Assembly: GCF_963853765.1 (NCBI RefSeq)
Contig: NC_088861.1
Coordinates: 30,380,001 to 30,444,000 of the forward strand
From: Magallana gigas
Lineage: Eukaryota
DNA length: 64,000 nt
Direction of reading: 5' to 3'
Shown in pieces: positions 3,918-60,853 of the stretch. The notes below the pieces were generated by a model. It was not told the DNA's origin. It ran no database searches and saw nothing but the letters and a program-made list of their open reading frames with translations. The stretch's first letter is position 1. Each line of letters begins with the position of its first letter. A program made the position numbers and the translations under genes.

Positions 3918-4150
3918 CTCTTCTTGACTTTCTTTCTGCAAGCGCTCGTTTTCTTCGATCTCCCGCTCCAGTTCGTGCAGTTTTTCGAGGGACCCCTTCA
4001 ATGGTCCACAGAGGCGGGTGTACTCCACAATGGCAATGGTATACTGTACGAGGGTGGCGCAGTCCTCGCTGCTGTACTTGGCGCTCGCAATGGTGATACC
4101 CTTAGTGCCATCCGGAGAGGGGGTCCGCTTCTTGGCAGCAAATGTTGTTT
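3918..4150 (-). CDS. Dynein HC exon (MTBD end / stalk CC2)
   Basis: TTFAAK...ITIASAKYSS...LCGPLKGSLEKL...ESQEE; phase 1-0. Confidence 0.88.

Positions 4151-60853: not shown

What the first reader, a model, noticed from the sequence alone, without database searches (positions are those of the whole stretch)
3918..60853. Intact but motif-degenerate outer-arm-type dynein heavy chain: candidate attenuated or scaffold 'pseudo-motor'
Seen: about 62 exons join with no stop or frameshift, so the gene does not look decayed. Nucleotide-site residues in AAA1, AAA3 and AAA4 are nonetheless altered, and the tail, linker, stalk and MTBD carry large insertions. Established: these motifs are near-invariant in motile dyneins, and AAA1 is the main hydrolytic site. 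Inference: this is a DNAH5/8-derived paralog with reduced or altered ATPase activity, possibly structural or regulatory in the axoneme or sperm flagellum.
Basis: partly seen in the sequence, partly recalled or inferred. Interest (0 to 1): 0.85.

Follow-up and report, generated by a model that had tools for sequence, protein, structure and literature searches.

The report
Oyster DNAHX non-motile dynein gene

Summary
The gene is real, intact and on the minus strand. The window holds only its first 79 coding exons (residues 1-4155, tail to MTBD/CC2). Another 25 exons lie beyond the window's low end, giving 104 exons and 5495 aa with no stop or frameshift. The protein is 99.8% identical to a RefSeq Crassostrea angulata protein annotated as uncharacterized.

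RNA reads from three studies confirm the AAA1 splice junctions. All 10 listed exon variants are synonymous.

Motifs:
- AAA1 is remodelled. The Walker A Lys, Walker B Asp-Glu and the AAA2 Arg finger are kept. Walker A has Thr to Val, the sensor-I loop is rebuilt, and the sensor-II Arg is Ala.
- The AAA4 P-loop has lost Gly-Lys, and this holds across the clade.
- AAA3 is not degenerate, contrary to the finding.
- Insertions in tail, linker, AAA1 lid, AAA4 small domain, stalk and MTBD are confirmed.

It is not a bivalve DNAH5/8 offshoot. It nests with full support in the sponge-to-amphibian DNAHX clade, which includes the sea-urchin type protein (52% identity). DNAHX very probably equals Kollmar's class-12 dynein of 2016. 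Two canonical outer-arm gamma genes sit elsewhere in the genome.

The kind is known and the oyster member is uncharacterized, so interest is low to moderate. The scan's notes hold no earlier DNAHX finding on other DNA.

The parts
3918..60853 (-). Coding exons 1-79 of the oyster DNAHX (class-12 dynein heavy chain) gene, residues 1-4155: tail, linker, AAA1-AAA4, stalk CC1, MTBD and the start of CC2. The gene continues outside the window, with exons 80-104 at window coordinates -1181 to -19013.
   Evidence: Spliced alignment to P0194 gives 104 exons, all AG/GT, with no stop or frameshift and 99.78% identity. Pfam finds DHC_N1, DHC_N2, AAA_6, AAA_7 and AAA_8.
28216..28239 (-). AAA1 Walker A, GPVGVGKT (aa 2382-2389, exon 42). 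The Lys is kept. The Thr of the canonical GPAGTGKT is Val, as at V2221 of sea-urchin DNAHX.
   Evidence: Alignment, coordinates, type protein residues. The exon 42/43 junction is seen in RNA.
27675..27692 (-). AAA1 Walker B, CFDEVQ (aa 2432-2437, exon 43). Asp-Glu is retained, and the following FNR is replaced by VQS.
27130..27165 (-). AAA1 sensor-I loop, HMTYNKETAPPG (aa 2482-2493, exon 44). The canonical MNPGYAGR loop is remodelled and its conserved Pro and Tyr are lost.
   Evidence: The same kind of change is reported for DNAHX.
26535..26558 (-). AAA1 sensor-II site, HHFSVATL (aa 2554-2561, exon 45). The Arg of the canonical YDFGLRNI is Ala.
14728..14751 (-). AAA3 Walker A, GANGSGKT (aa 3114-3121, exon 59). 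The motif is intact.
   Evidence: Walker B FIDDVN lies at 13938-13955.
10959..10982 (-). AAA4 P-loop, GAVGSHLS (aa 3485-3492, exon 68). The Gly-Lys of the canonical GVGGSGKQS is His-Leu. The Lys is missing in all 16 DNAHX-clade rows shown.
9039..9453 (-). Pre-sensor-II insert (PS2i) of the AAA4 small domain, aa 3686-3743, exons 72-73. It is predicted to form a beta-hairpin plus a helix.
   Evidence: The insert is present in all DNAHX rows and absent from canonical dyneins. AlphaFold2 on alignment A1 predicts strands at 252-263 and 266-277 and a helix at 283-295 of P0194:3445-3800, with block-mean pLDDT about 48-67.
33075..36632 (-). Linker insertion of about 125 low-complexity residues (aa 2000-2129), exons 33-36.
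   Evidence: Pairwise alignment to the oyster's canonical paralogs, coordinates.
4074..8531 (-). Stalk CC1 insertion (aa 3838-3886), MTBD insertions (aa 3967-4041) and MTBD/CC2 insertion (aa 4057-4103), exons 74-79.
   Evidence: The stalk-MTBD span is 550 aa against 400 aa in canonical outer-arm gamma chains. The Pfam stalk model PF12777 does not hit.
25041..25067 (-). 27-nt micro-exon 46 in the AAA1-lid insertion. It is alternatively included or skipped.
   Evidence: RNA joints 22621|25041 and 25067|26378 show inclusion. Joint 22621|26378 shows skipping.

Best explanation
The locus is the oyster ortholog of DNAHX, which is very probably Kollmar's class-12 dynein heavy chain. DNAHX is an ancient sister lineage of the outer-arm gamma (DNAH5/DNAH8) heavy chain. 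It is kept from sponges to amphibians and lost in amniotes and in the usual model organisms.

Shown here:
- The gene is intact, spliced, transcribed and under strong purifying selection.
- It has a tail of outer-arm gamma type.
- Its AAA1 pocket keeps the nucleotide-binding residues (Walker A Lys, Walker B Asp-Glu, AAA2 Arg finger).
- AAA1 has lost residues that work on the gamma-phosphate and its release: Walker A Thr to Val, a remodelled sensor-I loop, and sensor-II Arg to Ala.
- AAA4 cannot bind nucleotide in the usual way, because its P-loop Lys is gone.
- AAA2 and AAA3 P-loops are normal.
- The AAA4 small domain carries the family's pre-sensor-II insert.
- The stalk-MTBD span is about 150 residues too long.

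Inferred from the sea-urchin cryo-EM work: the protein binds ATP at AAA1 but hardly turns it over. It stays in a pre-powerstroke shape, held by the AAA4 insert clamping the C-terminal cap, and it binds microtubules poorly. It therefore acts as a non-motile partner or scaffold, pairing with another heavy chain in a 'dynein-X' complex. That complex can adopt the autoinhibited phi form, perhaps to deliver or silence axonemal dyneins during sperm flagellum assembly.
For: Gene model: 104 AG/GT exons, 5495 aa, no stop or frameshift, 99.78% identical to P0194.

Expression: exact spliced joints for exons 42-47 appear in RNA runs from three studies. In the stranded run, first mates lie almost only on the + strand, which implies a minus-strand RNA.

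Selection:
- 10 of 10 listed exon variants are synonymous.
- dN/dS is 0.016 between the 3' block and its downstream copy.
- Identity to the scallop ortholog is 75% over conserved columns.

Family:
- P0286 is a Lytechinus variegatus protein of 5272 aa carrying V2221, S2322, T2324 and K2393, as published for DNAHX.
- The window protein is 52% identical to P0286 over 5200 residues. It is 30% identical to the oyster's own canonical gamma genes.
- The tree puts the window gene inside a 20-row DNAHX clade with SH-aLRT 100. The clade's internal order follows the species tree.

Motifs.

PS2i insert.

Stalk and MTBD: 550 aa against 400 aa, with no PF12777 hit.

Published function: PMC11785096. Class-12 description: tail like class 3, and a stalk without a typical microtubule-binding site (PMC5100056).
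Against: - No biochemical or structural data exist for the oyster protein.
- In the oyster the Walker A Lys, Walker B Asp-Glu and Arg finger are all present, so slow hydrolysis cannot be excluded from sequence.
- Sensor II differs from the type protein (Ala here, Lys in sea urchin).
- The PS2i fold prediction has only moderate confidence (block-mean pLDDT about 48-67).
- The tissue of expression was not determined. Run names are coded, and most runs are oyster metatranscriptomes.
- The functional model rests on one preprint.
- The equation DNAHX = class 12 is inferred from descriptions, without a class-12 reference sequence.
Confidence: 0.85

Rival explanations
1. It is still a working motor, only slower or differently regulated. 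ATP is hydrolysed at AAA1 with non-canonical sensors, or the cycle is driven from AAA3. The stalk insertions tune microtubule binding rather than abolish it.
For: The Walker A Lys, Walker B Asp-Glu and AAA2 Arg finger are retained in the oyster. AAA2 and AAA3 P-loops and the AAA3 Walker B are intact. Purifying selection acts along the whole motor.
Against: The sea-urchin ortholog shows only pre-powerstroke particles, with ATP trapped at AAA1, despite an intact Walker B. The sensor-II Arg and the sensor-I Pro and Tyr are missing in every DNAHX row shown in the alignments. The stalk-MTBD span is 135-213 residues too long in all members, and the Pfam stalk model fails.
Confidence: 0.12
2. It is a recent, bivalve-specific duplicate of DNAH5/8 that is relaxing or decaying.
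For: The closest solved structures are DNAH5, DNAH8 and the Chlamydomonas gamma chain. Many motifs differ from them.
Against: Orthologs exist in sponge, placozoan, cnidarians, annelids, nemerteans, echinoderms, hemichordates, amphioxus, a tunicate, non-teleost fishes and amphibians. The clade has full support and follows the species tree. The reading frame is intact over 104 exons. dN/dS is 0.016, and the gene is transcribed.
Confidence: 0.01
3. It is the oyster ortholog of DNHD1 (Kollmar class 11), the other known degenerate 'orphan' heavy chain.
For: Both have a poorly conserved AAA1 site and scattered insertions.
Against: A named DNHD1 scores only E = 2e-11 and 23% identity against the DNAHX query, while DNAHX members score 1e-85 or better. 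DNHD1 and DNHD1-like rows sit outside the outer-arm gamma plus DNAHX clade in both trees. The preprint itself treats the two as non-homologous in sequence.
Confidence: 0.01

Closest known systems
DNAHX of the sea urchin Lytechinus variegatus (XP_041462850; Chai et al., bioRxiv 2025, PMC11785096)
   Same: - Same clade in the tree, with 52% identity over 5200 residues.
- Both are longer than 5200 aa.
- Same Walker A Thr to Val change, with Walker B kept.
- Sensor-I loop remodelled and sensor-II Arg lost.
- AAA4 small domain carries the pre-sensor-II insert.
- Insertions in tail, stalk and MTBD.
- Both animals are broadcast spawners.
   Different: - Sensor II is Ala in the oyster and Lys in the urchin.
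- The linker and AAA1-lid insertions differ in sequence.
- The oyster gene has alternatively spliced micro-exons and duplicated 3' blocks downstream.
- Nothing is known about the oyster protein's structure, partners or tissue.
Class-12 dynein heavy chain (DHC12) of Kollmar 2016 (PMC5100056)
   Same: - The description fits: the tail resembles class 3 (outer-arm gamma).
- The stalk lacks a typical microtubule-binding site.
- It is present in sea urchin and absent from human.
- Its origin predates Metazoa, which agrees with the tree and AU tests here.
   Different: No class-12 reference sequence was available, so the identity is inferred from the text. Kollmar proposed an outer-arm position and a class-12/class-13 heterodimer. 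The 2025 preprint proposes a transport or inhibition role with an unidentified partner.
Canonical outer-arm gamma heavy chains (DNAH5/DNAH8; oyster genes at C9:7.06 Mb and C3:38.1 Mb)
   Same: - Same domain order.
- Tail of the same type.
- These are the closest solved structures.
- They form the sister clade in the trees.
   Different: - Only about 30% identity.
- The canonical genes have GPAGTGKT, DEFNR, NPGYAGR, DFGLR and GSGKQS, a 400-aa stalk-MTBD span and no PS2i.
DNHD1 (class 11)
   Same: It is a degenerate, probably non-motile heavy chain needed for sperm flagella. The preprint calls it a possible functional analogue.
   Different: It is not homologous at the family level. It lies far away in the trees and gives only a weak sequence match. 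Per the preprint, its insertions are at different sites and it lacks the catalytic Walker B residues.

Membership tests
DNAHX | Forms one clade with the type protein, separate from DNAH5/DNAH8 | tested here: met
   20 rows including P0286 and the window gene form one clade with SH-aLRT 100. Canonical gamma chains form the sister clade with support 99. Pairwise identity is 52% to the type protein against 30% to canonical paralogs.
DNAHX | Unusual length, over 5000 aa | tested here: met
   5495 aa. Canonical oyster paralogs align with a 4624-aa guide.
DNAHX | AAA1 with Walker A Thr to Val, non-canonical sensor-I loop, sensor-II Arg lost, Walker B present | tested here: met
   GPVGVGKT, HMTYNKETAPPG, HHFSVATL and CFDEVQ. 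The paper's residues were verified in P0286.
DNAHX | Pre-sensor-II insert in the AAA4 small domain (beta-hairpin plus alpha-helix) | tested here: met
   A conserved insert of about 55 aa lies before the sensor-II helix in all DNAHX rows and is absent elsewhere. The predicted structure shows a hairpin plus a helix at moderate pLDDT.
DNAHX | Insertions in stalk coiled coil and MTBD | tested here: met
   Insertions at aa 3838-3886, 3967-4041 and 4057-4103. The span is 550 aa against 400 aa. No PF12777 match.
DNAHX | Locked pre-powerstroke state with ATP held at AAA1; non-motile | not testable with these tools
   Needs purified protein, ATPase and gliding assays, or cryo-EM.
DNAHX | Heterodimer with another heavy chain (dynein-X), phi-particle form | not tested
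   No partner is known, and no complex prediction was run.
Kollmar class-12 dynein | Tail homologous to class 3 (outer-arm gamma); stalk without a typical microtubule-binding site; holozoan distribution | tested here: inconclusive
   The features fit, but no class-12 reference sequence was at hand to compare.
Canonical outer-arm gamma chain (DNAH5/DNAH8) | Groups within the DNAH5/8 clade and keeps the canonical AAA1 catalytic motifs | tested here: not met
   It lies outside the clade, the motifs are altered, and the genome has two true members elsewhere.
DNHD1 (class 11) | Groups with DNHD1 sequences | tested here: not met

The most novel reading that the evidence does not exclude
The oyster DNAHX locus may carry a second functional copy of its AAA5-AAA6-C-terminal block. 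This copy covers the 22 exons 83-104 and lies about 32 kb downstream, at window -34797 to about -51400. It has an open frame. It differs from the first block by 67 synonymous and only 4 non-synonymous changes (dS 0.10, dN/dS 0.016).

If the copy is real and not a mis-assembled haplotype, it could serve as an alternative 3' module or as a separate truncated protein. That would be a form of modular diversification not described for any dynein gene.

A lesser point: the tree and AU tests place the origin of DNAHX before animals, as Kollmar suspected and against the 2025 preprint.
Probability: 0.2. Interest if true: 0.5.

Novelty: new member of a known kind. Interest (0 to 1): 0.3.

Why it matters
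The finding reaches, from raw sequence alone, a conclusion that took cryo-EM of native sea-urchin dyneins to establish: animals with free-spawned sperm keep an outer-arm-type heavy chain that has given up motility. The oyster gene adds a well-resolved, expressed ortholog in a farmed species where sperm are easy to obtain.

The comparison adds a few details that the main-text passages of the preprint I read or searched do not mention:
- The AAA4 P-loop Lys is lost across the family.
- The AAA2 and AAA3 sites and the AAA1 Arg finger are retained.
- The AAA1-lid insertion contains an alternatively spliced micro-exon.
- There is evidence that the lineage is older than animals.

None of this changes the known picture.

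Tried and rejected
- Pseudogene or decay: rejected. The reading frame is intact over 104 exons, the gene is spliced in RNA, and dN/dS is 0.016.
- Sole DNAH5 ortholog: rejected. Two canonical genes lie at C9:7,056,779-7,091,559 and C3:38,116,575-38,142,537, each modelled without stop or frameshift.
- DNHD1 ortholog: rejected.
- AAA3 degeneration: not found.
- Solved DNAHX structure in the PDB copy: none found. The best chains are DNAH5, DNAH8 and Chlamydomonas gamma.
- First junction-refinement pipeline: it left in-frame stops because tblastn matches ran across small introns. I replaced it with my own spliced-alignment dynamic programme. Block borders placed at match starts gave false frameshifts, which mid-match anchors cured.
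- End-anchored codon comparison of the 3' copies was wrong because of a 3-residue indel. I redid it on a protein alignment.
- Supplementary tables of Kollmar 2016 are not held, so class-12 membership of an oyster gene could not be looked up.
- Tissue of expression could not be read from the coded run names.
- One genome search failed on query length and was repeated with a shorter part.

Full report
**What is there.**
Pfam hits on long minus-strand open frames showed a dynein heavy chain running from high to low coordinates. DHC_N1 lies near 56,000 and 47,500, DHC_N2 near 38,000 and AAA_7 near 14,000-15,000. The window is C9:30,380,001-30,444,000 of a 564-Mb, 29-contig genome. Runs that hold the stretch are labelled oyster.

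tblastn with full-length relatives showed that the gene starts at the ATG at 60853. It also showed that the gene leaves the window: residues after about 4155 are encoded at window coordinates -1181 to -19013, which I fetched as loci L001-L002.

**Gene model.**
I wrote a protein-to-genome spliced aligner with introns in all three phases and with penalised frameshifts and stops.
- With a caecilian guide it gave 93 exons and 5192 aa.
- With a reedfish guide it gave 85 exons and 4840 aa.
- Neither guide needed a stop or a frameshift, and 60 exons were identical between the two models.

A later search returned the RefSeq Crassostrea angulata protein P0194 (LOC128183562 isoform X10, "uncharacterized", 5495 aa). 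With P0194 as guide the locus gives 104 coding exons, every one with AG/GT borders. There is no stop, frameshift or gap, and 5483 of 5495 residues are identical.

Exons 1-79 (residues 1-4155) lie in the window between 60853 and 3918, and 25 exons lie beyond it. So "intact" is confirmed. "About 62 exons" is an undercount, and 3918 is the window-limited end, not the gene's end.

**Expression and constraint.**
Four RNA runs from three studies were laid on 22450-28449. They show the joints 27706|28104, 27192|27570, 26573|26965, 25067|26378 and 22621|25041, all with CT..AC ends, which is GT..AG on the minus strand.
- These joints match exons 42-47 exactly.
- Depth falls on exons, with little on introns.
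- In the stranded run, first mates lie almost only on the + strand, which implies a minus-strand RNA.
- A further joint, 22621|26378, shows that the 27-nt micro-exon 46 is sometimes skipped.

All ten exon variants listed by that call are synonymous. The 3' block and its downstream copy differ by 67 synonymous and 4 non-synonymous changes over 1094 codons, giving dS 0.099 and dN/dS 0.016.

**Motifs.**
The alignment used 16 relatives and canonical dyneins, including the oyster's own two outer-arm gamma genes.
- AAA1 Walker A is GPVGVGKT. The Lys is kept and the Thr of GPAGTGKT is Val.
- AAA1 Walker B is CFDEVQ, with Asp-Glu kept.
- The sensor-I loop MNPGYAGR is replaced by MTYNKETAPPG.
- The sensor-II Arg of YDFGLRNI is Ala (HHFSVATL).
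- The AAA2 Arg finger (SPASVSRSG) is kept.
- AAA2 Walker A (GPPGSGKS), AAA3 Walker A (GANGSGKT) and AAA3 Walker B (FIDDVN) are normal. The claim about AAA3 therefore does not hold.
- The AAA4 P-loop reads GAVGSHLS in place of GVGGSGKQS. The Lys is missing in all 16 DNAHX-clade rows shown.

**Insertions.**
Against the oyster's canonical paralogs (about 30-31% identity) the protein carries about 770 extra residues in blocks of 12 or more. They lie in:
- the tail (aa 398-774 and 1117-1280);
- the linker (aa 2000-2129);
- the region before AAA1;
- the AAA1 lid (aa 2567-2667);
- AAA2;
- the AAA4 small domain (aa 3686-3743);
- stalk CC1 (aa 3838-3886);
- the MTBD (aa 3967-4041) and MTBD/CC2 (aa 4057-4103);
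- the C-terminal domain.

From the AAA4 sensor-II helix to AAA5 there are 550 residues, against exactly 400 in canonical gamma chains. Pfam's stalk model PF12777 does not match. It is also missing from the precomputed domains of all relatives of this type, but present in canonical hits.

**What family.**
The nearest full-length proteins are not mollusc DNAH5/8. They are 4400-5650-aa proteins from many animal groups:
- amphibians, sturgeon, gar, bichir and coelacanth;
- amphioxus, a tunicate, echinoderms and hemichordates;
- annelids, nemerteans and molluscs;
- cnidarians, Trichoplax and a sponge.

[quoted passage not shown] It describes a 5272-aa Lytechinus variegatus protein with these properties:
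- it is closest to the outer-arm alpha (DNAH5/8) chain;
- it is found from sponges to frogs and absent in reptiles and mammals;
- it has insertions in tail, stalk and MTBD;
- it has a beta-hairpin plus helix pre-sensor-II insert in the AAA4 small domain that holds the C-terminal cap;
- it has AAA1 changes (Walker A T to V2221; sensor-I S2322 and T2324; sensor-II K2393) with ATP trapped;
- it is seen only in the pre-powerstroke state;
- it forms a heterodimeric "dynein-X" that can take the phi form.

Protein P0286 is a 5272-aa L. variegatus "DNAH8-like" protein. It carries exactly V2221, S2322, T2324 and K2393, so I take it as the type sequence.

The window protein is 52% identical to P0286 over 5200 residues. 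It is 68% identical to the mussel ortholog and 30% identical to canonical gamma chains.

In a 40-row maximum-likelihood tree (4345 columns) the window gene sits with mussel, scallop and clam inside a 20-row DNAHX clade that contains P0286.
- Support for the clade is 100.
- Its internal order follows the species tree.
- The oyster's genes at C9:7.06 Mb and C3:38.1 Mb fall in the canonical clade.
- DNHD1-like sequences lie far away (an earlier tree agrees).

The AAA4 insert is present and conserved in sequence. AlphaFold2 on a 16-sequence alignment predicts two strands and a helix between the last helix of the small domain and the sensor-II helix, at moderate confidence.

Kollmar's 2016 survey (PMC5100056) had already defined a "class-12" dynein. 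Its tail resembles class 3 (outer-arm gamma), and its "extremely unusual stalk" lacks a typical microtubule-binding site. It is present in sea urchin and not in human, and it arose in Holozoa or earlier. DNAHX is very probably that class, but I had no class-12 sequence to prove it.

**How it most likely works.**
Shown:
- The protein is made from an intact, constrained gene.
- It has a tail of outer-arm type.
- It can probably still bind nucleotide at AAA1, AAA2 and AAA3.
- It lacks the AAA1 sensors, lacks a P-loop Lys in AAA4, has the cap-clamping insert, and has a disrupted stalk-MTBD region.

Inferred from the urchin structure: ATP stays bound at AAA1, the linker stays bent, microtubule binding is weak, and the chain serves as a non-motile partner or phi template.

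The main rival is a slow but real motor. It remains possible because the oyster keeps the Walker B Glu and the Arg finger.

**Origin.**
In both trees DNAHX, together with an intron-less environmental protein (P0017), is sister to all outer-arm gamma chains, including fungal and protist ones.
- P0017 is 4481 aa and sits on a 19-kb contig.
- It keeps a normal stalk domain and the sensor-II Arg, and it lacks the AAA4 insert.

AU tests reject trees that unite DNAHX with animal gamma chains alone.
- Without P0017 the log-likelihood difference is 663.
- With P0017 included it is 374, with p = 5e-7.

The hypothesis was framed after seeing the tree, the model was LG+G4, and the DNAHX stem is long. Long-branch attraction is therefore a live alternative. 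The result agrees with Kollmar's suggestion of a pre-metazoan origin and disagrees with the preprint's early-animal duplication.

**Verdict.**
The oyster gene is an uncharacterized member of a known kind.

Noticed in passing
outside the window: window coordinates -34797 to about -51400 (C9:30,328,600-30,345,200; loci L004-L006): This is a second tandem copy of the gene's 3' block, exons 83-104 including introns. DNA identity is 90-96%. The reading frame is open, and protein identity to P0194 is 99.7% over 1094 residues. dS is 0.099 and dN/dS is 0.016 against the first block. No 5' exons of the gene lie nearby. It is either a real constrained duplicate or a divergent haplotype assembled in tandem.
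   Followed up: partly
outside the window: window coordinates -59246 to about -77000 (loci L006, L018-L019): This is a third copy of the 3' block, from exon 80 onward, at 88-98% DNA identity. The spliced alignment needs four frameshifts and one in-frame stop, so it looks like a pseudogenised fragment.
   Followed up: partly
window 25250-25649: A repeat lies in the intron between exons 45 and 46. RNA contig depth reaches 540-840 at 25250-25449, against 50-500 on neighbouring exons. Many reads run on into unlike sequence at 25312-25376. It is probably a transcribed repeat or transposon family, not part of the gene.
   Followed up: no
G000 C9:7,056,779-7,091,559 (+) and C3:38,116,575-38,142,537 (+); loci L007-L017: The oyster's two canonical outer-arm gamma (DNAH5/8-type) genes are here. 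Each was modelled as an open frame of about 4150-4240 aa with all canonical motifs. The C3 gene groups with sea-urchin DNAH5, and the C9 gene groups with an ark-clam and an amphioxus gene.
   Followed up: partly
L022:2496-15941 (ENA assembly ERZ25042219, contig of 19,186 bases): P0017 is an intron-less 4481-aa dynein and the sister of the whole DNAHX clade (support 100). Its AAA1 Walker B Glu is Asn and its sensor-I loop is altered. It keeps the sensor-II Arg and the Pfam stalk domain, and it lacks the AAA4 insert. It is a possible protist relative of DNAHX.
   Followed up: partly
G000 C8:46,765,360-47,164,035: Five separate weak matches (about 32-35% identity) to the DNAHX linker exon lie within 400 kb on contig C8. 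They may be a cluster of dynein-like genes or fragments. They were not examined. A class-13 candidate partner could be sought here or elsewhere.
   Followed up: no
window 58920-58955, 58277-58291, 50031-50057, 41881-41904, 39055-39078, 18202-18228, 6677-6721: Besides exon 46, the isoform used as guide has seven more in-frame micro-exons of 15-45 nt in the window. They sit inside long introns and mostly fall in the family's insertion regions. Only exon 46 was checked against reads.
   Followed up: partly
window 63675-64000: Another first-stage note places the start of a cGAS-like receptor gene here, upstream of the dynein gene. It was not examined.
   Followed up: no
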